A stretch of 63,100 nucleotides of DNA, the filler included, from Reticulomyxa filosa (Eukaryota; Protista; Foraminifera), in assembly GCA_000512085.1 (NCBI GenBank). It is 15 parts of 15 records of this genome, joined end to end, with 100 filler letters (N's around TTAATTAATTAA, not from the genome) between each part and the next. Parts side by side here need not be neighbours in the genome. Positions count along the whole stretch, not along the records: positions 38,603 to 49,070 come from ASPP01004799.1; 14 more parts are not named here. The stretch is one strand, 5' to 3'. The position numbers were made by a program, and so were the translations under genes. This document shows positions 38,603-50,623 of this stretch, one piece after another (position 1 is the stretch's first letter; each line of letters opens with the position of its first letter). The notes beneath the pieces were generated by a model. The model was given only the letters and a program-made list of their open reading frames with translations, was not told the DNA's origin and did no database searches.

Positions 38603-38840
38603 AAAAAAAAAAAAAAATATGCACTTTCGCTTTACCTCGGATGTTGTGGTTAAACCCAATTTTTCGTAGTTGCTCCAATCCAAACACACCACTGAACACG
38701 TCCTTTGTTGTTCGATGTTTGGCTTGGATGGACACCTCATTTTTGCTGGTGTCCAGTGAGGTAGAGAAAACGTACGGGGTATTATTTGTTATCATTATAA
38801 ATCCACTTCCTCCTCCCTTCTTCTTTCCGATGGACGCCAT
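38603..38840 (-). CDS. First exon of an unidentified gene, divergent from the mitochondrial carrier
   Basis: ATG-initiated exon MASIGKKKGGGSG...IGFNHNIR followed by a GTAAAG donor and truncated at the contig edge. Confidence 0.5.
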
Positions 38841-39111
38841 TCCTGTGTTATTAAGTTAGATATTTGTTATTGCAAATATTTATTGGGGTCTCGAGAGCCT
38901 CTCTTCTTAGGCTTTTTGTTTTTTCAACCCCCCTTTTTTCACCACAAAGTCGTACAATTTAGAATCCAAAGCATAATACTTACTTACACTTTAAAAATAA
39001 AAAGACGATATATCGATCAGACAACCTGTCACGTGTTTTTATTTTGTTTGCCAAAAAAAAAAAAAAGGGGGAAGGAAACAAAAATATAAAAAAAACTATT
39101 GGCAGCAACAT

Positions 39112-40244
39112 ATGCCCAACGAAATTGCAGGAAATTCTGGGACGAATCCATCAAAGGGGGTCCTGCCTCCTCCTCCAGCACATCCCCCTGCTCCAAAACC
39201 GAACAAGAATCTGAAGATCTTGTTAAGTGGTGGTTTTGCAGGAATGATAAGCAAGACGTGCACAGCACCGTTGGAACGAGTGCAGATACTAAACCAAACG
39301 GGAGCAACTCACGAGACAATAATGTCGACATTGAAGCACATTTTGACGAGAGACGGGACGATGGGTCTGTGGAAAGGGAACTTTGCCAATTGTGTGCGTA
39401 TATTTCCACACAAGTCGTTATTATTTGGGGTCAACGATTTTCTGGTGAAGCAAACCAAGTCCACGAGTTCATACGTCAACTTTTTCACAGGTGTGAGCCC
39501 CCCCCCCCCGAAATTACTATACTGTTTGGTTGATATCTGAAAGAGTATATATAAATATATATATATATATATATGTATTATGTGTGATTGTGTAAAAAAG
39601 GAGCAACCGCGGGAGCAGTGGCAACGACAATTACATATCCGATTGACTTAATACGAGCCCATTTGTCTGGCACGTGGGATCCAAACAGTAAATCCATGAT
39701 CCAGGTGACCAGATCCATCATTGTGAACGAGGGGGTTTCTGGCCTTTACAAAGGATTAGGTGTGACCTTGCTTGGCGCCTTTCCATATGAAGGCGTACGT
39801 ATCGGAGTGTACAGGTACTTTTTTTTTTTTTAAAAATAAAAAATGTGTGCACTAGGAAAATGATAACTAACTTATTTATTTATTTGTGATGGGGGGGGGA
39901 TTGTTGTTGGCAGTGTTCTTCGGGACTATATTCCGACAGTGGAGGCGTATAATAGCATACAACCACACCCGATCGGAAAGCTATGTGCGGGTGCACTTGC
40001 AGGTGCTGCGGCAGGTGCTGTCACTTATCCTACAGACACCGTTCGCCGAATGTTGCAAGTCCAAGGCGCAGACGGCTTGCCCAAATTCAGTGGTGTCATT
40101 GACTGCACAATCAGAACCTTTCGCGAAGGGGGTTTACTACGCTTCTACTCTGGACTGTCTGCCAAATTAGTTCGAGTCATTCCTGATGCTGCCATTTTGT
40201 TCCTTGCTTATGAAAGTCTTAAAAATTATTTTCAACATGATTGA
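39112..40244 (+). CDS. Mitochondrial carrier (SLC25), CoA / adenine-nucleotide carrier-like; 3 exons
   Basis: Three Px[DE]xx[KR] signatures (APLERVQ, YPIDLIR, YPTDTVRR), plus LSGGFAGMISKTCTAP, LWKGNFANCVRIFP and GLYKGLG. Confidence 0.93.
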
Positions 40245-40763
40245 ACTTCAATTTATTCCATTTCTCCCTTGTCTCTCTCAACCACTCATTTTTTACTCTT
40301 TTTTGTTGATTCCGATTATTAAAACATAATTGATGCTGTTGTTTGTCTTTTATTTCTTTTGTTCTGTTTTGTCTTGTTTGGTTTGTTTTAATTGGTTCTG
40401 GGTGCATATGGGAGTGTCTGATACTACTCAAATACATCTCCACACTGCATCGTTTGTTTTATCTTGGCTTGTGTGTTTGGGTGATTAACTTTTAGTTTTC
40501 CCCTTTTTTTTTTTTGTTCACATTCTTTAAACAAAATTTTTGCTTTTTTTTTTTAAATCATTAAAAAAAAGGACTTTGTAGTCACATCCCCTCAAAAAAA
40601 TAACAAATAAAAAAACACGACTTTGAGAGCGATGCAATTTCAATATACAAGTAGCAGGCATTTCTCAAAGAAGCAAACAAAATGATGATGAAAGATGAAG
40701 TAGTAATTGTTTTGGTTTTTTTTAATTTTGTTTTGTTTTATTTTTTTTTAATGTGAGGTTAAC

Positions 40764-42277
40764 TCAAGAAGAATTTTCAACACTCAATAAAAAAGCTATC
40801 AAAATAAGTTTCAAAAAAAAAAAAATTTGTGCGGATCGCTTGAGATTGAAAGTGTCTTTACAAATCGGTTTTTGTGTGGTCATTGCCTGAATCCTCTTGG
40901 CAGTGTCCTGGCCAGAGTCGATGTGAGTTTGTGGATCCGAGACGGAAGAGGCGCCGGATTGGCTGTCAGTGTCATTGGATGAGAGAGTGTGATTGTCCGT
41001 ACCATCTTCGTGTTTGTTCAGATCTTCGTTTGTGGGCAAAGATGGTGGTCGTGTGTATCGCATTTTCAACTTGAAGTAGCTAATATCTAAGTTTGTTGAC
41101 GCCGCGTCGCACAAACTTTTGTACTTTTGAATACAATACCCATCAAATTTGATTTTTACTTCTTTGTCATTGTCTTTCGTTTCTTGTCGTATCCTTGTTT
41201 TTTTATTTTAAAAAAATAAAAAATCAACAATAATAACATTAACAAAAAATTTTAATTTTTTTTTTTTTTTTTTAAATTCGTAGTCCCCCGTTCCCCCCCT
41301 CCCTCCCTCCCTCCTCTCTCTCCTCCTTCTCCTCATTTAGTCTCTTCCAGACAATAACTGTTTGATTAGTTTCTCTTGTTCGAGCAACCACTCTTCCAAA
41401 TGATCAGTGACAGTGAAACACATATCTTGCACCAATTTGTGCGTTTTGGACGTTGATTTTAGCAGCTTTGGTTTTTTGACGTGATAGTGCTTTGGCAACG
41501 CTTCTTTTTCCTTTTCAATGTCTGTCGTGTTGTCCTCTTCGCTGCTCTGCTTCAAAGAGTCGAGCAGCTGGTCATATTCCAATTGCTTTTTTTGTGACTC
41601 GACTGAGATGTTCGCTTCAATATCTTCCACAGTTTCTTGAGGAATCAAATATAAATTCCCATTTTTTCGTTTTCCTGTCGAATACTGGCCTGCCCTCCAT
41701 TCACGTACACACACACACACATATACATATACACACAAAACACATAACAGTGACCTTTGTCATGACAGATGCTTTTCATCTTATTTCATTTGCAAATGTT
41801 ACAAAAAAAAACATTGCTTTGTCAAAAAAAATAAACAAACAATATGTGTTCGTTCATCAAATGAACCTTGAATATTGTCACAAATGCCCTCCATTGCCAC
41901 GGAAATTCTGAGAAGGTCCGATTGTTTGCGAATTTTTTTACCCTTTTTTTTTTTAAAAAAAAAAAAAAAAGGGGAAAACTGGGCTTATTACGTGAATGTT
42001 ATGCGTTAACAAAAAAACAAAAAACAAACAAAAAAACAACAACAGTGGTTTTGGTCCTGATTGAACACAAAACTGCGGAGTCCAATCTAAAACCAAACAA
42101 AGCATCAAAGTTTGCAGAGTCGTCATAATAGGAATTGTTCAATGACGTCACAATAGTTTGGCAGGTGCTACAAAATAGTGACGTCAGATCCGCAGAAGAC
42201 TTGAATTTAGCTGGTACATCAGCTACCATTGCGCGAATAAGTATACAAGAGCACAAAAACAGAAAAATTCGCAACAT
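40764..42277 (-). CDS. Canopy (CNPY)/MSAP-like saposin-fold secretory-pathway protein; multi-exon
   Basis: Signal peptide MLRIFLFLCSCILIRA, then CSTCQTIV...GFRLDS. A short exon near 41880-41925 reads SDLLRISVAMEGICDN, followed by LVQDMC...LEEWL and YCIQKYKSLC. This six-Cys saposin-like spacing matches Canopy proteins. The 3' end is uncertain. Confidence 0.65.
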
Positions 42278-42805
42278 TTTGCAGAGGAACAAAAGCTACT
42301 GTTAGAAAAGATAATTGTTGAGAGTTTTCTGCTTCACTTCCAACGTGACTGAACTCTCCCTTCAAACTATGCCCAATTTTAGCGTATCTCTTTAAAAAAT
42401 TAGTAACATCTTTTTTCCACATTTGCTGCTTTTCAAAAGAAAATTTTCACAGTGGAATGATTTTCATGAATGAAATTTCAAATAAATTATTTTCAATATA
42501 CAGCAATTTTAACAAAAAAAACTTTATGCATCGCTTTTTTTGCGAATAAATGTTTAAATAGATAAACAAACAAACGTCTCTAAAGTTGAAATATGAATTT
42601 ATAAATAGAAAAGCAAATTAATTAAATACTTCAAAACAAAAAATGAGAATATTTTTTTGTTTAATGCTAAAAACCACACAAACTCTTTGATTAAGACTTA
42701 CAGAATATGTTTCGGCCTGCAGCTGAAACTAAAAAAAAAGGTTTTAAAAACGGTTTTTTGTTTGTAGGAGTTTTTATCTAAAGCTGTTAGAGTATTACCA
42801 TTAAC

Positions 42806-45800
42806 ATGACACAGCAAGACGAGAAGGATCCCTTGGCCGATTACACTGGTGTGTTGATGTACTGTACTTCAAACGAAAAGTCTACTAAATTACTGGGAAA
42901 GAGAAAACGAAACAAAAATAAAAACAGGCCCATGGATTGAGAAGCGCATTGAATGGACGTGCGACACGCGAAAACAATCAGTCGAATTATTTGGATCGTG
43001 GAATCGATTCAAAGGAGGCGACGACTTGGAATATCAAGGTGTGGATACCACACCATTCCCATTTTTTAAAAACAACAAAACAAACAAAATACATAATAAT
43101 CGTAAGAAAGATGAACAAAATTGAAGCTCATGAAAAAAAATCGAAACATACTACAGGACAAAATATATATGCTGTGACTGTGAAGTTACCTTTGGGAACG
43201 TATGTGTATCGATTTTTAATTGATGGAGAGGAATGGGAAACAAATTTGGGTGAGGCCAAGGCCATTCGAGATGGTTTTGAGTATAACACCATCACCGTCA
43301 AAGGTGTGCGCAATTTCCACTTGTAATTTTTTTGCCCCTTTTTTTTTTCGGCATTTTTTTTTGTATACGTTTTTTTCTATAAACACAACATCAAAAAAAA
43401 ACCCTTTTATGTTTGATGACGTTTTTTTATTTTTTTTATTTTTTCTTGGTCAAATAAACCCGAATTTTTAAAAAATGATTATTTAAAAAAAAAAACAGCC
43501 AATGACGCAGAGAGCAGTGAAGACGAAGAAGCTCAAGAAGAAAACAAAGAAGATGTCAACGAACAAATGCTTACTTACGATGAATCGACCGGAGGATTTG
43601 TTGTTGGCAAAGGGTAAGTTTTTTTTTTTTTCATCAACTCTCCAACCTTTTTATTTTCACGATTTTGCTTCAAGTTTTCCGGGATTTAACATTAATGAGG
43701 AAAGAAAAATGGGCTCCCCAAATCCAAAGATTTTTTTTATTGAAATAAAAATGTAGCAAAAAAAGAAAAAGACGTGGCCGTCCAAGTATCGAGATTGAGC
43801 TTCCATCAAACTTTGTCGAAGCTGCTCCTTCTGAACCACAACAACAACAAGCGACGACCACTGAACCGTTAAGATAAAAAGAGAAAAGAAAAAAATCCTC
43901 TCCTCTTTTTTTTTTTAGTAAATCCTTTTTTAAATTTTAAGTTTTCAAAATTTTACAGCCCAATGTACGTATACTTATATTGTAAATTTAAAAAAATAGG
44001 TCGGAAAGTGTCGCTGAAAAACAATCTGAAGGAGCAGAAAAAAGCAAGAGCCGAAAAAAAAAGAAAGGCAAAATGAGAGGATTTGGAATGGCTAGGAATG
44101 ATGTTGATGTTAAGTAAATTTTGATTAGTGGGATAACTCAACAAAAAGAATGAGGACATCCTAAAAAAAAACATTTTCCCGCACACAATACTTTTTAAAA
44201 AATGGTTGAAAAGAAAAAATTAATAAAGTCCTTGTTCGATAAATACTTTTACATTGTTATGTTGGATGGTTGATACAGTTAAAGCAATTGTTTAAAGAAA
44301 AGGAAGAAGAATGGGCTCGGATGGTCTTTGTCCAACAATTGCGACAACAACAACAACACAATGATGAAGTGAACCGAGTCAAAACGCTTTGGAAACAAGA
44401 ACGACAAGTGCGTGTTGACATGCAAAAGCGAGTCCAAATGAAAAATAAAGAACTCGAGCAAAAAATCATTGAATTGACAGGAGAAATTGATAAACTAAAA
44501 GTATGTTTCCATTTTTTTTTTTGTGTTTGTTTGATCAAGTTTTGGTTGTGTTTGCATTGCAAAGAAACAAGCGGAAATTCAAGCCGGAGGTGATAACAAG
44601 CAAACAGCCTTGTTGGAAGACGCAATGAAAAAAAAAGATCAAGAAATTGAATCTAAAACAGACGAACTCAAAGCTGCTCGTGAACAAATTACTATTTTGA
44701 GAAAAGAAAAAGTTAAGAAAGCAAACATTGACAATTTGTTGTAATCTTGAATTTGTCAGTTACTCTTGTTGGTTTGCTTGTTTTGATAGACGGAACTCGA
44801 AAAAAATTCACGAAGCCAAACAGGAGACTTGGAAAATGAAAAACGATCCTTATTGGGCGAATTGAATAGACTACAAACTGAATTAAGCTCTATTCAAACC
44901 CAAAATGAAGCCTTGCGCAAAAACATTGACGTCATTAGATCTGGTAATTCTGAAACAAGGACGTTAGAAACACAACGTTTTGCAACTTTGCAAGCCAATT
45001 GGGAAGTTGAGCAAAAGACTAAAACATAATTTAACAAGCAAAGGGCATAATTTGTTTATTTTGTGAATTGTCTTAAATAGGAAGAAAAAAGGATTTATTG
45101 AAATACAAAGACGAGGTTAAACGATTAAAAGGAGAATTGTCTGAAAAAGAGACAGAATTACAAAAAGAAGCCGAAGCAAAAAGGGCAAGTGACCAACATA
45201 GCCATAGTGAACGAACCAAAAATGAAAGTTTGCAAGAGAAAATAAGAGAAATGGAAAAAGAAATTGCAGGATTGAGTGATGTCTCTAAGCACAATGCGGC
45301 AATTAAGTCAGCCGTAGAAAAAGAGCGAAGCGAGTTGGAAGGAGAAAAAAAGACATTGGAAGAAAAAATTGAAATACTTGAAAAACGGCTTACATCTCAA
45401 AAGAGTAATTTTGAAGAGGAATTACACCGTGTTAAAGCGCAAGCCAAGGCAGATTTGGACTCTTTAGCCGAAAAAACGGACAAGGAAGCAGCAGGACGAT
45501 TGGAAGAATTGCGAGTGCTCATCACACAAAAAGATGACGAGATTCGTGGTGCCAAGGAAAGAATTGTTAAATTGGAGGATGGATTGAACGAAGCAAGAAA
45601 CACTGGAGAAAACTTGTCCAAGAAATCGACAGCTTTGAGCGACGAATTGGAAGTGACCAAAAAGGAAAAAAGAGAATTAGAAAAGGAAAAAACCGATTTG
45701 TCTGGACATGTCGAAAAATTGAAGGAAGAATTAAAAGAGAAAGAGTCGTCTGCACAAAATGCGGAAAGTGCAGCATCGAACAAGATCAACAACTTGGAAA

Positions 45801-47699
45801 AAGAATTGGCAGCTCACAAAGAAAAATCCACAAACGAAATCAACTCGGTGGAGGCGTCAAACCGAAAGTTGTCAGAACAAATTGACGGTCTTAAAAAAGA
45901 ATTGTCTGATAAATCCTCTGAAAGCACTTCGCTTGCAGACAAGCTCAGACAAGCGGTTGATGATATCGGCACTTTGCGTAATTCGGAATCATCATTGAAA
46001 GGACAAGTCGAGGGACTGAACAATCAATTAGCAAAAGAACGCGAAGACACTCAAACCGCTTTGAAAGAGAGAGACAGCAAAATTGATGCTCTTTATGGAC
46101 AAATGGAAAAGTCGCTCGGAGAAAAAGATAGCAAAATTGGTGATTTGGAGGGAAGATTGGTGGAAACACAAAAAAGTTTGGAACAGAAATTGTCCGAATT
46201 CCAAAATTCGCAAACAACAATCGAGAAATTAAATGTTGAAATCAAGGCAAATGCCAATCAGTTCGAACGTGAAAAAGCAGCATATGAAGAGCGAATTGCT
46301 ACAGCCGCCACTAAAGATGAAAAGATTATGAAGAAATGCAAAGACATATCCCAAACTTTCACAACCCTTCAAAAAGAAATGAACGAAATCAAAACCGCTA
46401 AGATCGAACAATTAGAAAAGATGAACGAATTCTTCCCTAATTTCAAAGATCTGTTGACACGCTCTTTTGGCTTCCATCAAAACTTGGTGGATGGATTGAT
46501 GGAAAAATACAAGTCCGAGCTTACCTTGCGTCGTAAATACTTCAACATGTTGCAAGATTTGCGAGGAAATATCCGAGTATTCTGTCGAGTCCGACCATTA
46601 TTGCCATTTGAAATTAAAAAAGGATACTCTGAGTGTATCACATTCCCAGTGGAAGGCTCAATGCTGATTAAAGATGACAAAGATCAACAGTTGAAATTTG
46701 ACTTTGATCAAGTGTACACTCCACAAACTTCTCAAGAAAAGGTGTCAGAAGATACTACTGAGTATGTGCAATCGGTGATGGACGGATACAACGTCAGTAT
46801 TTTTGCCTACGGTCAAACCGGAAGTGGAAAGACTTACACAATGAACGGACCACCAGAAAACCCTGGTGTCAACTTGAGAGCTTTGAAGAACTTGTTCAAA
46901 TTGGCACAAGACAGAAAGCCGATGTTTGAATACGAGATCAAAGTGTCCATTTTTGAAATTTACAATGAGGAAGTTCGAGACTTGTTGTCTGGCATCGAAA
47001 AAGGAAAGAAAAAGAAAAAAGATGAAAAACCTGCCAAGAAAGAAAAACTTCAACATAAGATTTTGCATTTGCCTGATGGATCCGTCGAAGTTACAAACTT
47101 AAACTGGATCTATGTCGAAACAGACCAAGACGTCGTTGAATTGGACGATGTTGCCAAAGCAAACCGTACCGCAGGTGTCACAGATATGAACGCACACTCT
47201 TCGCGATCGCACATGTTGTTAGTCGTTGATGTTAAAGGGTTTAACGTTCCTGCCAATATTGAGTATATTGGTAAACTTTATTTGGTGGATTTGGCCGGAT
47301 CAGAACGTGTCAAAAAATCAGGAGCAACAGGTCAGGCATTGCTGGAGGCACAAAATATTAACCAATCGCTCTCTGCTTTAGGAAACTGCATGCAAGCATT
47401 ACAACAGAAGAAATTTGTTCCTTATCGAGACTCGACATTGACAGATATTATGACTAATGCTTTAGGTTTGTTCAAAATAATGTTTGTGTTTTTGCTGGAC
47501 GAGACAAACATAAATTTTTTTTTAAACAGGTGGAAATGCCAAAACAGTCATGTTTATCAATTGTTGCCCGACTGCAGAGCATGCCTTTGAAACAGTTTCA
47601 TCTCTGAAATTTGCAGAAAGAGTCGGAAAAGTGGAACTGGGTCAAGCAAAACAACAAAAGACAGCACCCAAAAAAGCAAAGCCAGAAACCAAGCAGTAA
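42806..47699 (+). CDS. Kinesin-14 (C-terminal motor, KIFC-like) with an N-terminal CBM48/AMPK-beta glycogen-binding domain and a long coiled coil
   Basis: Motor motifs: neck LRGNIRVFCRVRP, P-loop GQTGSGKT, switch I NAHSSRSH, switch II LVDLAGSER, VPYRDSTLT, LGGNAKTVMF, ETVSSLKFAERV. Upstream GT-AG exons splice in phase from ATG 42806. Exons 2-3 give IEWTCDTRKQSVELFGSWNRF...VKLPLGTYVYRFLIDGEEW...YNTITV. One junction (45081) needs one extra A in an A run or an alternative splice. Confidence 0.88.
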
Positions 47700-48278
47700 A
47701 ATACACACAGATCAAACATCAAACAGCAAAAAAAATGTTTTTTTTTCATGCTCTTTTTTCCCTTTTTTTGTTTTAGTTTGTGGTGGTTTTTGTTGTTTGA
47801 ATTTGTTTTGTTCTTTTTGGTTGATATGCTTGAGAGTGGCATTTTTGGAGTTGTAAAAAACAAAAACAATTGGTTTGAGAATACGCAATGGTTTTTTTTT
47901 GAAATATCCCTATTTTTGTCATGTTGCCGGGGATTGGCATCGTGACTATAACAAATTTGTACATAATTCTTTGAAGTATTTTTCAGAGCAACGGAAATAA
48001 ATTTAGAGGAGATCAATCCACTCAATTTTTTTTTAAAGAAATGACCAATTTATTAGATTGGAAGAACTACTACAACCCAAAGTGATAATACTATTGATTA
48101 TTACTCCTTTTTTTACCTATATCTTGTTTATAGAGCAGCACAGTTAAATTTGTGTGCGAACTTTTTTTCCTAAATAATTAGCAGGATTAAGAAAAAGAGA
48201 ACATCCAAAGAGACGTACCGAAACACCAACTTTGTGTTTTTTTGTTTGTTTGATTAGACCCTTTAATCATTGTAAAAA

Positions 48279-49028
48279 ATGTGGCTGGATCCGGTGTTAG
48301 TAGGTCTAAACATTGTAAGTATAGTGTTGTTGATAATTTTGACGCTAAATTCAGAAGCACCACTGAAAAGAGTGATAGTGAACAGTGGCTACATAACGAT
48401 GTTGTACCAAGGTTGGTCGTGGTGCGTGATATTTGTAGTAAAGCTGTTATTATATCAAGTGTTTTCGTATTTCTACTACACAAGCCGTATTCCAAACATA
48501 TTGGAATATTTGTTCGACCGCAATAAAATGGCGATGATGTTTCCAGACGCCACAAGAATAGCCGAAGAAGAAGTGGACAGCATTGCGTGGAGAATGCATC
48601 AATGCATGTTGTTTGTAGTATTTAGCATGGGGATCAAATATATATTGCAATTGATCGTAACGAACGAAACGACGGAAGCATTGAAGCAATACCAATTGAA
48701 AAGCAAGTATTCTTACATATTCGATGCATTAACCGGAGAGTACGTATTTCAGCCGGGAAGAGTGTTGGACAGTCTGAGCGGTGCCAATGGCGACGCAATT
48801 GAATTGGGAGACAAGTTGCTCTCGCGCAATCGCGCAGACAAGTTTAACGCGTTTGAAGAGTCCATTATGCGTTACCAATTGGAGACGTGGAAGCCATGGC
48901 CCAGCGAAGTTATGGAATTTACAAGGTTGTATCAATTATTCGCTAATGTCCATGTCAGCGGCATTCAAAACATTCCATCGGACACTCCTTCCCTAATCAT
49001 TACTAATCATGCTTTAGGCCATGGGTAA
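48279..49028 (+). CDS. Membrane protein with the start of a PlsC/LPLAT-type acyltransferase domain (3' incomplete)
   Basis: Three hydrophobic segments, then VHVSGIQNIPSDTPSLIITNHA, the typical 'G.ENIP..P.LIV.NH' entry into the acyltransferase HxxxxD motif. Cut by an intron and the contig end. Confidence 0.7.
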   Translation: MWLDPVLVGLNIVSIVLLIILTLNSEAPLKRVIVNSGYITMLYQGWSWCVIFVVKLLLYQVFSYFYYTSRIPNILEYLFDRNKMAMMFPDATRIAEEEVDSIAWRMHQCMLFVVFSMGIKYILQLIVTNETTEALKQYQLKSKYSYIFDALTGEYVFQPGRVLDSLSGANGDAIELGDKLLSRNRADKFNAFEESIMRYQLETWKPWPSEVMEFTRLYQLFANVHVSGIQNIPSDTPSLIITNHALGHG

Positions 49029-50623
49029 ATCATATAATTAATAAAATATATGTATATGTAATATGATATGNNNNNNNNNNNNNNNNNNNNNNNNNNNNNN
49101 NNNNNNNNNNNNNNTTAATTAATTAANNNNNNNNNNNNNNNNNNNNNNNNNNNNNNNNNNNNNNNNNNNNTGCTGCTAAGTGATTATTCAATGTACAGCT
49201 CGTTGTTGTCACTCAAAGCAAAAAATAATGTGATAAAAACACAAAAACGTACGTAAGTACAACTCTGCTAAAAGTGAGAAAACGAGATATGTCCTTTCCT
49301 TTAGTCTAGTCATTAAAAAAAGTGTGACTACAAGTACACATCTTTAGTCAAAGCACTTTTCGAGCTTAAAACAAAAAATAGTCTTATGACTTATAACAAC
49401 TCGAATTGTTTGAAAAATTATCAGCTTTTTGTACTGAGAATGATATTCGTAATTAGATACTTGAAACTTATCAGACGATTTTTCAGCGCGCAAAGTGCTT
49501 ATTCAATGTACAGTTCGTTGTCACAAACATATACGTAAGTAAGATTTCGCCAAGGGTTGGAAAACGTTATGCAAATACGAATACGTTTTGATTCAAAGGT
49601 TTTCAATGACTAAAAAAGTTATTCAAACAACAATTACAGTAAATTTGCGTTGCAACACATTATTGAATGTTGAGTTTCGACAAATCCACAGGCTTTATTT
49701 TCCATGTGATAGTTTCTTTTTTTTAGAACACAAAAAAAATTGTTATGACGTATGCACAAAAGTTTGTCTAGTGTGCAAAAAGGAAAAGTGCTTGATTGGA
49801 AACGTATCCCTTGTGGCAAAACATTTTTTTGACTTTAGTTTTTTGGAAACGTTTCAAAAGACAATATTAAGTTTACAATTTTTTTCCAATGTAGCCCTTG
49901 CCATGTAATCACTTTGCAGTCGAATTTGTGTATTCCTTTCTTTTTTTTTTGCGAGTAATGCATGATTCAGAAAATAAAATGTTATATTGTTTTAATCCTT
50001 CAATTCGAGTTGTTAATTAATGCAACTATTTTTTTTTTGGAACAATAAGTAATGAATTGCAAAAAAAATGTTTGATCTATTGATCCAAAATAATTCATAA
50101 TACAGTTTTTCTGAAGGATAATCATACCCAGTGGTAAAATAGCTTCAAGATATTGCAATGCATTGACAAATTGCAAAAAGGTGTTATTGGTATAAAATAC
50201 ATAGATATCTAAGAATACATTTGTAATTTTGATCACTTTTCATTTGTTACATGAACATCTTTGTTCAAAATATTCTGAAAAAATAATTTAATTTTATATT
50301 ATGGTTTATAGATGCGATATACAAAATACAAAAATAATTCAAGAATCACTTATATGATTTGTTCCTCCAGAAAAACTATAAAATGAATTGAAGTGACTCC
50401 AAAAAAAAGTAGTTTGTTTTTATGCAACAAACACGATAAAAAAAACTGTATTGAAATTACTAGATTATTATTCCAATAATTCTCTTTAAAGTATTTTTAG
50501 AATAAAATCTTGTACGCTTAGAGNNNNNNNNNNNNNNNNNNNNNNNNNNNNNNNNNNNNNNNNNNNNTTAATTAATTAANNNNNNNNNNNNNNNNNNNNN
50601 NNNNNNNNNNNNNNNNNNNNNNN

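What the first reader, a model, noticed from the sequence alone, without database searches (positions are those of the whole stretch)
42806..47699. Kinesin-14 carrying a glycogen/starch-binding CBM48 domain: candidate motor for alpha-glucan granules
Seen in sequence: the ORF track shows only the motor, but manual splicing links ATG 42806 to it through phase-compatible GT-AG exons. These are MTQQDEKDPLADYTG / PWIEKRIEWTCDTRKQSVELFGSWNRFKGGDDLEYQG / QNIYAVTVKLPLGTYVYRFLIDGEEWETNLGEAKAIRDGFEYNTITVK, then an acidic linker, a basic linker, a long coiled coil and the C-terminal motor, with no intervening terminal stop exon. Established: W..V.L.GS[WF]N.[WF]...L..G.Y.Y[KR]F.[IV]DG.W...N.I.V is the AMPK-beta/CBM48 glycogen-binding signature, and kinesin-14 motors are minus-end directed with the cargo tail at the N-terminus. 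Inference: the cargo-binding position is occupied by a carbohydrate-binding module, so the motor could haul glycogen or starch particles (or glucan-associated complexes) directly along microtubules, for example in reticulopodial transport. I know of no characterised kinesin with this architecture. Caveats: the second glucan-stacking aromatic is Phe (GSWNRF), and one downstream junction (45081) is out of phase by one base.
Basis: partly seen in the sequence, partly recalled or inferred. Interest (0 to 1): 0.85.

Follow-up and report, generated by a model that had tools for sequence, protein, structure and literature searches.

The report
Kinesin-14 with remodelled glycogen-binding-fold tail
A microtubule motor gene of the giant amoeba Reticulomyxa really does begin with a domain shaped like a glycogen-binding module, a design shared by other foraminifera and Paulinella and missed by the public annotation; but its sugar-binding site is rebuilt and these organisms seem not to make glycogen, so it probably carries something else.

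Summary
The fusion is real. The piece is a Reticulomyxa filosa contig. Eleven exons (42806-47699) encode an AMPK-beta-type CBM48 domain, charged linkers, a long coiled coil and a C-terminal KIFC3-like kinesin-14 motor. All eleven map in order onto one intron-free 1255-aa ORF of a close relative, found in two independent assemblies. The out-of-phase junction at 45081 is one base short in an A-run, most likely an assembly error. NCBI's model (RFI_05478) omits the CBM exons. About 25 relatives share the design, including Paulinella and Nonionella proteins; their motors group on one branch (SH-aLRT 99).

Of the four AMPK-beta residues critical for glycogen binding, only W133 is kept (W100F, K126R, N150Y, family-wide). 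A published survey found no glycogen branching or debranching enzyme in R. filosa or any rhizarian. Best reading: a minus-end motor whose CBM48 fold is a repurposed cargo or partner-binding module. No paper describing it was found. Red algae have a separate PLAT-CBM20-kinesin-14, and plants a malectin one, so sugar-binding folds joined kinesin-14 repeatedly. No transcript of this genome was seen. New variant of a known kind; interest 0.5.

The parts
42806..42848 (+). Exon 1, start codon and short acidic leader
   Evidence: weak match, 5/12, to P0122 1-12
42928..43038 (+). Exon 2, first half of the CBM48-fold domain; Phe at 43008-43010 stands where AMPK-beta has W100
   Evidence: (31/36 identical to P0122)
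43157..43303 (+). Exon 3, second half of the domain; Arg 43210 (K126), Trp 43234 (W133), Asp 43270 (L146), Phe 43276 (T148), Tyr 43282 (N150), invariant Asn 43285 (N151)
   Evidence: (AMPK1_CBM E 3.6e-5)
43499..43613 (+). Exon 4, acidic linker (13 D/E in 37 aa) ending in a conserved predicted beta-hairpin
43757..43867 (+). Exon 5, basic cluster and conserved RRGRPS-x-E motif, then low-complexity linker
44000..44108 (+). Exon 6, second basic linker (11 K/R in 36 aa)
44279..44500 (+). Exon 7, conserved start of the helical stalk, shared by the long foraminiferan forms
   Evidence: (58/74)
44565..44711 (+). Exon 8, stalk; AAG acceptor
44790..45005 (+). Exon 9, stalk
45081..47465 (+). Exon 10, long coiled coil, kinesin-14 neck (to about 46560) and motor (P-loop 46811, switch I 47189, switch II 47282); one base short in the A-run near 45085-45090
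47530..47699 (+). Exon 11, end of the motor, short basic tail, stop codon
   Evidence: 48/54

Best explanation
One gene encodes a kinesin-14 of about 1,258 aa, of the KIFC3-like kind. Shown: the domain order (CBM48 fold, acidic and basic linkers, about 700 aa of coiled coil, neck, C-terminal motor), intact catalytic motifs and purifying selection on all parts. Inferred from family knowledge: it dimerises through the stalk and walks to microtubule minus ends. Inferred: the N-terminal domain came from an AMPK-beta-type CBM48 in an early rhizarian and now serves as a cargo or partner-binding module whose ligand is not storage glycogen, most likely a protein or peptide bound at the rebuilt Phe/Arg/Trp/Tyr face. 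The basic linkers may hold a second microtubule or an acidic membrane, which would give cargo transport or microtubule sliding in the pseudopodial network or spindle.
For: Colinear intron-free ORF in a relative, two assemblies. Fold matches the AMPK-beta CBM (Foldseek E 1.8e-6; Z 14.0, rmsd 1.8 A over 84 residues). CBM exons are more constrained than the stalk: 82% vs 62-64% identity, dN 0.11 vs 0.25, dS about 1.5-2.4. Family-wide replacements: W100 to F in 22/25, K126 to R in 20/25, N150 to Y or F in 24/25, L146 never the majority; W133 kept in 17/25. One short paralog clade swaps the pair to Y126/R133, which keeps an aromatic-arginine pair but removes the stacking Trp. No branching or debranching enzyme in R. 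filosa or Rhizaria. The AMPK-beta1 region 68-123 binds the debranching enzyme protein independently of glycogen, so this fold can bind proteins.
Against: No binding or motility data; the ligand is not identified. F for W and R for K are conservative, and a Tyr could add a new stacking surface, so sugar binding is not excluded. The absence of glycogen enzymes rests on a 2014 survey of two rhizarian genomes, one of them this fragmented assembly; I could not repeat it. Fast organelle transport in Reticulomyxa was ascribed to a dynein-like motor (PMC2288898 abstract), so this kinesin is probably not the main transport motor.
Confidence: 0.5

Rival explanations
1. The domain still binds a carbohydrate, but not storage glycogen: beta-glucan, a glycoconjugate on a cargo, or small oligosaccharides that regulate the motor.
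For: The site stays aromatic-rich and conserved in its new form. Most rhizarians are said to use beta-glucan. The same foraminiferan domain subtype also occurs with an F5/8 type C, galactose-binding-like domain in a Nonionella protein. Three different sugar-binding folds (CBM48, CBM20, malectin) sit on kinesin-14 tails.
Against: No precedent tested here for CBM48 binding beta-glucan. From my own knowledge, beta-glucan stores are usually inside vacuoles, out of reach of a cytosolic motor. The Y126/R133 paralogs lack the stacking Trp.
Confidence: 0.22
2. One reading: the domain binds alpha-glucan, and the motor hauls glycogen or starch particles toward minus ends.
For: The closest structures are the glycogen-binding AMPK-beta CBMs. 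W133 is kept, and F and R are conservative. Plant AKIN-beta2 binds starch in vitro without K126 and N150 (PMC4032982), though it keeps both Trp. Red algae, which store starch in the cytosol (own knowledge), carry a CBM20 kinesin-14.
Against: Only one of four critical residues is identical. No glycogen branching or debranching enzyme was found in R. filosa, Bigelowiella or other Rhizaria.
Confidence: 0.15
3. The domain has no external cargo. It is an intramolecular regulator (autoinhibition of the motor or a dimer cap), and the basic linkers do the tail's work by binding a second microtubule, as in Ncd-type sliding motors.
For: Conserved basic clusters follow the domain. [quoted passage not shown]
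Against: The motif and hairpin after the domain are low-confidence in the model (pLDDT 50-68) and show no sign of packing on it. The short paralogs keep the domain with a different linker.
Confidence: 0.1
4. In this genome the CBM exons and the motor are separate genes, or the gene is broken at 45081.
For: The assembly is one base out of phase at 45081. NCBI's model starts at 44202 without the CBM. No R. filosa read was seen.
Against: All exons are colinear with one ORF of an 88%-identical (neck and motor) relative. dN/dS is 0.02-0.15 on both sides of the junction. Three in-frame routes need no missing base: donors at 44944 or 44977, or the AAG acceptor before 45092 that NCBI's model uses. There is no terminal exon after the CBM.
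Confidence: 0.03

Closest known systems
Kinesin-14, KIFC3-like (kinesin family member C2/C3; PDB 5WDE)
   Same: Best solved match to the motor (E 2.5e-65); C-terminal motor, Ncd/Kar3-type neck, long N-terminal coiled coil.
   Different: N-terminal CBM48-fold domain and charged linkers; the motors form their own branch, apart from animal KIFC3.
AMPK beta subunit carbohydrate-binding module (CBM48, Pfam AMPK1_CBM; PDB 1Z0M, 4YEE)
   Same: Same beta-sandwich (Z 13-14, rmsd 1.4-1.8 A); W133, G147 and N151 kept.
   Different: W100F, K126R, L146D, T148F, N150Y; fused to a motor rather than a kinase complex; host lineage apparently without glycogen.
Plant malectin-domain kinesins MDKIN1/2 (kinesin-14; PMC7094084)
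   Same: A carbohydrate-binding-type fold at the N-terminus of a kinesin-14, conserved for hundreds of millions of years, ligand unknown.
   Different: Different fold (malectin), different lineage and a different branch of the motor tree.
Red algal PLAT-CBM20-kinesin-14 (Gracilariopsis PXF46250, Eucheuma, Agarophyton, Gracilaria; in databases, no paper found)
   Same: A starch-binding-type domain N-terminal to a kinesin-14 motor.
   Different: CBM20 rather than CBM48, preceded by PLAT, motor not at the C-terminus; own clade (SH-aLRT 100), not joined to the CBM48 group.
PTST1/PTST2 and FLO6 (plant coiled-coil plus CBM48 targeting proteins; from own knowledge, not tested)
   Same: Non-catalytic CBM48 with a coiled coil, acting as an adaptor.
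   Different: No motor; plastid-located; intact starch-binding site.

Membership tests
Kinesin-14 | Kinesin motor with intact P-loop, switch I and switch II | tested here: met
   Pfam Kinesin E 6e-84; motifs at 46811, 47189, 47282
Kinesin-14 | Motor at the C-terminus after a long coiled coil | tested here: met
   Motor ends about 27 aa before the stop; stalk 54-67% EKRQLA with 1 Pro in about 650 aa; no dedicated coiled-coil predictor was run
Kinesin-14 | Class-specific neck before the motor core | tested here: met
   Ncd and Kar3 chains align from query residue 13-17, kinesin-1 mostly only from 29-31; neck ends in LRGNIRV
Kinesin-14 | Motor falls in the kinesin-14 clade against other families | tested here: inconclusive
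   All near hits are kinesin-14 or KIFC-like, but my trees held no outgroup from other kinesin families
Kinesin-14 | Minus-end-directed motility | not testable with these tools
   Needs a gliding assay
CBM48 / AMPK1_CBM (fold and homology) | Profile match above the curated cut-off | tested here: met
   Whole domains of relatives score 30-52 bits against a 26.8 cut-off. The window's exon 3 alone scores 24.3; the joined window domain was not searched.
CBM48 / AMPK1_CBM (fold and homology) | AMPK-beta-like beta-sandwich | tested here: met
   Model of relative P0015 (pLDDT 85.5) matches 4YEE and 1Z0M
Glycogen-binding CBM48 (function) | Critical residues W100, K126, W133, N150 | tested here: not met
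   F, R, W, Y in the window; the same pattern dominates 25 relatives
Glycogen-binding CBM48 (function) | Host makes cytosolic alpha-glucan | not tested
   No search of the R. filosa proteome was possible here; the literature says no branching or debranching enzyme in Rhizaria
Glycogen-binding CBM48 (function) | Binds glycogen or cyclodextrin in vitro | not testable with these tools
   Needs a pull-down or ITC

The most novel reading that the evidence does not exclude
Rhizaria have an ancient, undescribed kinesin-14 subfamily that grips a carbohydrate cargo directly through a retuned CBM48, and red algae reached a similar design separately with CBM20. That would be a motor that moves polysaccharide or glycan-coated cargo with no protein adaptor.
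Probability: 0.3. Interest if true: 0.8.

Novelty: new variant of a known kind. Interest (0 to 1): 0.5.

Why it matters
It corrects a public gene model and defines a kinesin-14 subfamily, apparently undescribed, shared by foraminifera and cercozoans, whose microtubule-based pseudopodial motility is poorly explained at the molecular level. A CBM48 kept under strong selection in a lineage that seems to have lost glycogen is a clean natural test of how a sugar-binding fold gains a new ligand. Together with the red algal CBM20 and plant malectin kinesins it shows repeated recruitment of carbohydrate-binding folds to kinesin-14 tails, with no ligand known in any case found here. The 100-residue domain is easy to express and test.

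Tried and rejected
I did not resend, trim or mask the request, and did not use read laying, so there is no read evidence from this genome. The joined spliced model was not built, searched or folded, as the operators asked: exons were searched one by one, and natural proteins of relatives (P0015, P0122) stood in for the whole domain. A homolog search with the CBM region of P0024 found only three close proteins. The CBM profile search of representatives was filled mainly by proteins with tandem CBM repeats and by N-terminal fragments. phmmer of a single CBM against PDB found nothing; the profile did. The ESM Atlas has no cluster with both domains among its top hits, which shows nothing about novelty. 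Ten paper searches found no description of a CBM48 or CBM20 kinesin; the 2014 R. filosa genome paper is not held, and subscription journals are mostly not covered. The careful tree did not finish and no AU test was run. With LG+G4 and FastTree the single branch for all CBM48 motors was weak; only the mixture model gave 99. Rejected: a chance ORF mosaic (shuffles, colinearity), a pseudogene (low dN/dS), an AT-hook reading of RRGRP (no basic residues after GRP; not tested further), and packing of the downstream motifs on the domain (low confidence).
Full report
Source. The piece 38603-49070 is 10,468 bases. The neck and motor are 100% identical to RFI_05478 (ETO31642) of the foraminiferan Reticulomyxa filosa, recorded on a contig of 10,468 bases. 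That public model is 1132 aa, starts at 44202, lacks exons 1-6 and ends in a different tail. So the CBM exons are not in the annotated protein.

Gene structure. Eleven exons link ATG 42806 to the stop at 47697-47699 with GT donors, AG acceptors, no internal stops and matching phases, except at 45081. The exon 8 acceptor is AAG; both NCBI's model and the relative read straight through it. The exons sum to 3776 bases, one short of a 1258-aa frame. I worked exon by exon and left out any search or fold of the joined model.

One transcript. P0122 is a 1255-aa protein with AMPK1_CBM, Microtub_bd and Kinesin, encoded without introns on a 4302-base JGI contig (3300030741) and a 3892-base Logan contig (SRR7522797). 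Each window exon aligns to it in order and almost end to end: exon 2 31/36, exon 3 37/47, exon 7 58/74, exon 10 594/786, exon 11 48/54. At the problem junction the relative reads through with five codons where the window has 14 bases, inside a run of six A. The piece holds over 90 A or T runs of six or more, so an assembly slip is the simplest reading (inference). Three other in-frame routes exist (donors 44944 and 44977; acceptor before 45092). Synonymous sites are near saturation, while dN/dS is 0.08 for the CBM exons, 0.10-0.15 for linkers and stalk and 0.02-0.03 for the motor, so the gene is live on both sides. Reads of R. filosa itself could not be obtained.

Range. Two motor searches gave 29 proteins (25 after removing cluster duplicates) with the CBM at the N-terminus and the motor near the C-terminus. 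Named ones are Paulinella chromatophora (Cercozoa) and Nonionella stella (Foraminifera); the rest come from unnamed assemblies, some from intron-free genes on genomic contigs. There is a long form (1100-1700 aa) and a short form (760-820 aa). In a mixture-model tree these motors, plus two CBM-less rows (one a Nonionella protein with a Cys-rich N-terminus), lie on one side of a branch with SH-aLRT 99; simpler models left that branch weak, and there was no outgroup. Most CBM-less tips inside the group look N-terminally cut. One origin in an early rhizarian is likely but not proven.

The motor. The best solved match is KIFC3 (E 2.5e-65); Ncd and Kar3 also align over the neck. P-loop and both switches are intact. 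Minus-end motility and dimer formation follow from established kinesin-14 knowledge and were not tested.

The N-terminal domain. A family profile finds AMPK-beta CBMs first (E 1.7e-12). The model of a relative's domain (pLDDT 85.5) matches them at Z 13-14 and rmsd 1.4-1.8 A. The fold is therefore secure. The binding site is not. W100, K126, W133 and N150 are the critical residues of AMPK-beta1 (PMC4032982), and W100G and K126Q abolish glycogen binding (PMC6274970). The window has F, R, W and Y. The profile alignment is gap-free from G147 onward, and the structural end-points (model 97 to chain 156) agree, so the invariant Asn is N151 and the Tyr stands at 150. Across 25 relatives: F 22, R 20, W 17, Y or F 24. 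In the short paralogs the pair becomes Y126/R133, one event in one clade, which fits a structural aromatic-arginine pair better than a sugar platform (inference).

The host. A phylogenomic survey found no glycogen or starch branching or debranching enzyme in R. filosa, Bigelowiella or any rhizarian database entry (PMC4236520). A later paper says beta-glucan replaced alpha-glucan in most rhizarians (PMC7965971). I could not repeat this search. Taken with the rebuilt site, it makes glycogen cargo unlikely (about 0.15).

Mechanism. Best reading (0.5): a minus-end kinesin-14 whose CBM48 fold is a repurposed cargo or partner-binding module, probably for a protein, followed by a conserved hairpin and basic RRGRPS motif that may bind microtubules or membranes. 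Rivals: another carbohydrate (0.22), alpha-glucan (0.15), a purely internal regulator (0.10), separate or broken genes (0.03).

Comparison. It works like other kinesin-14s with accessory tail domains. The closest described parallel is the plant malectin-domain kinesin, whose ligand is also unknown (PMC7094084). The searches also showed a red algal clade with PLAT, CBM20 and a kinesin-14 motor, separate in the tree, and one more CBM20 kinesin on another branch (P0081). No paper on a CBM48 or CBM20 kinesin was found in ten searches of the open literature; subscription journals were largely out of reach, and domain databases already hold the architecture for unnamed proteins.

Verdict. Observation confirmed; interpretation partly supported. 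A real, conserved, apparently undescribed domain architecture, but probably not a glycogen motor. New variant of a known kind, interest 0.5.

Noticed in passing
P0310, P0334, P0373, P0376, P0323 and others: Red algae (Gracilariopsis, Agarophyton, Eucheuma, Gracilaria) have a kinesin-14 with PLAT and CBM20 domains before an internal motor; one clade, SH-aLRT 100. Their CBM20 keeps the first LGxW Trp but seems to lack the later Lys and Trp of the starch site (site residues from memory). No paper found. Red algae store starch in the cytosol, so this may be the better candidate for a glucan motor.
   Followed up: partly
P0081, L006 49-3426 (JGI 3300016906): A third, separate kinesin-14 with an N-terminal CBM20 (E 1.8e-12) whose LGxW, YKY and WE motifs all look intact; organism not identified.
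   Followed up: partly
P0259, P0253, P0245: The same foraminiferan CBM subtype occurs without a motor: with an F5/8 type C domain in Nonionella stella (P0259), and before a helical region (P0253).
   Followed up: partly
P0058, P0066, P0073, P0075: Short paralog (760-820 aa), one from Nonionella, in which the residues at AMPK positions 126 and 133 are swapped to Tyr and Arg.
   Followed up: partly
P0108 (Nonionella stella): Motor near or within the CBM48 group, but with a Cys-rich, RING-like N-terminus in place of the CBM.
   Followed up: no
L003 1-8554 and 10001-13342: A CBM48 kinesin gene without introns lies head to head with a 4634-aa dynein heavy chain gene, about 1.4 kb apart, on a 40-kb contig.
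   Followed up: no
window 39112-40244 +: Three-exon mitochondrial carrier gene (Pfam Mito_carr in each exon).
   Followed up: partly
window 48279-49028 +: Membrane protein ORF ending in the start of an acyltransferase domain (E 0.008); cut by the edge of the piece.
   Followed up: partly
window 40764-42430 -: Several minus-strand ORFs (116, 133, 97 aa) that look like exons of one gene pointing away from the kinesin; no Pfam match.
   Followed up: partly
window 42745-42770 +: A pyrimidine tract and TAG about 36 bases before the ATG suggest an intron in the 5' untranslated region.
   Followed up: no
P0001 (RFI_05478) C-terminus, window 47690-48082: The public model skips the stop at 47697 and adds a hydrophobic tail from T-rich downstream sequence; relatives end at the stop, so that tail looks like a prediction error.
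   Followed up: partly
P0113, P0306; P0061, P0076, P0100, P0104: Other kinesin-14 fusions among the hits: dual-specificity phosphatase (Pythium, Lagenidium) and Pfam PF00790 (Eutreptiella and others).
   Followed up: no
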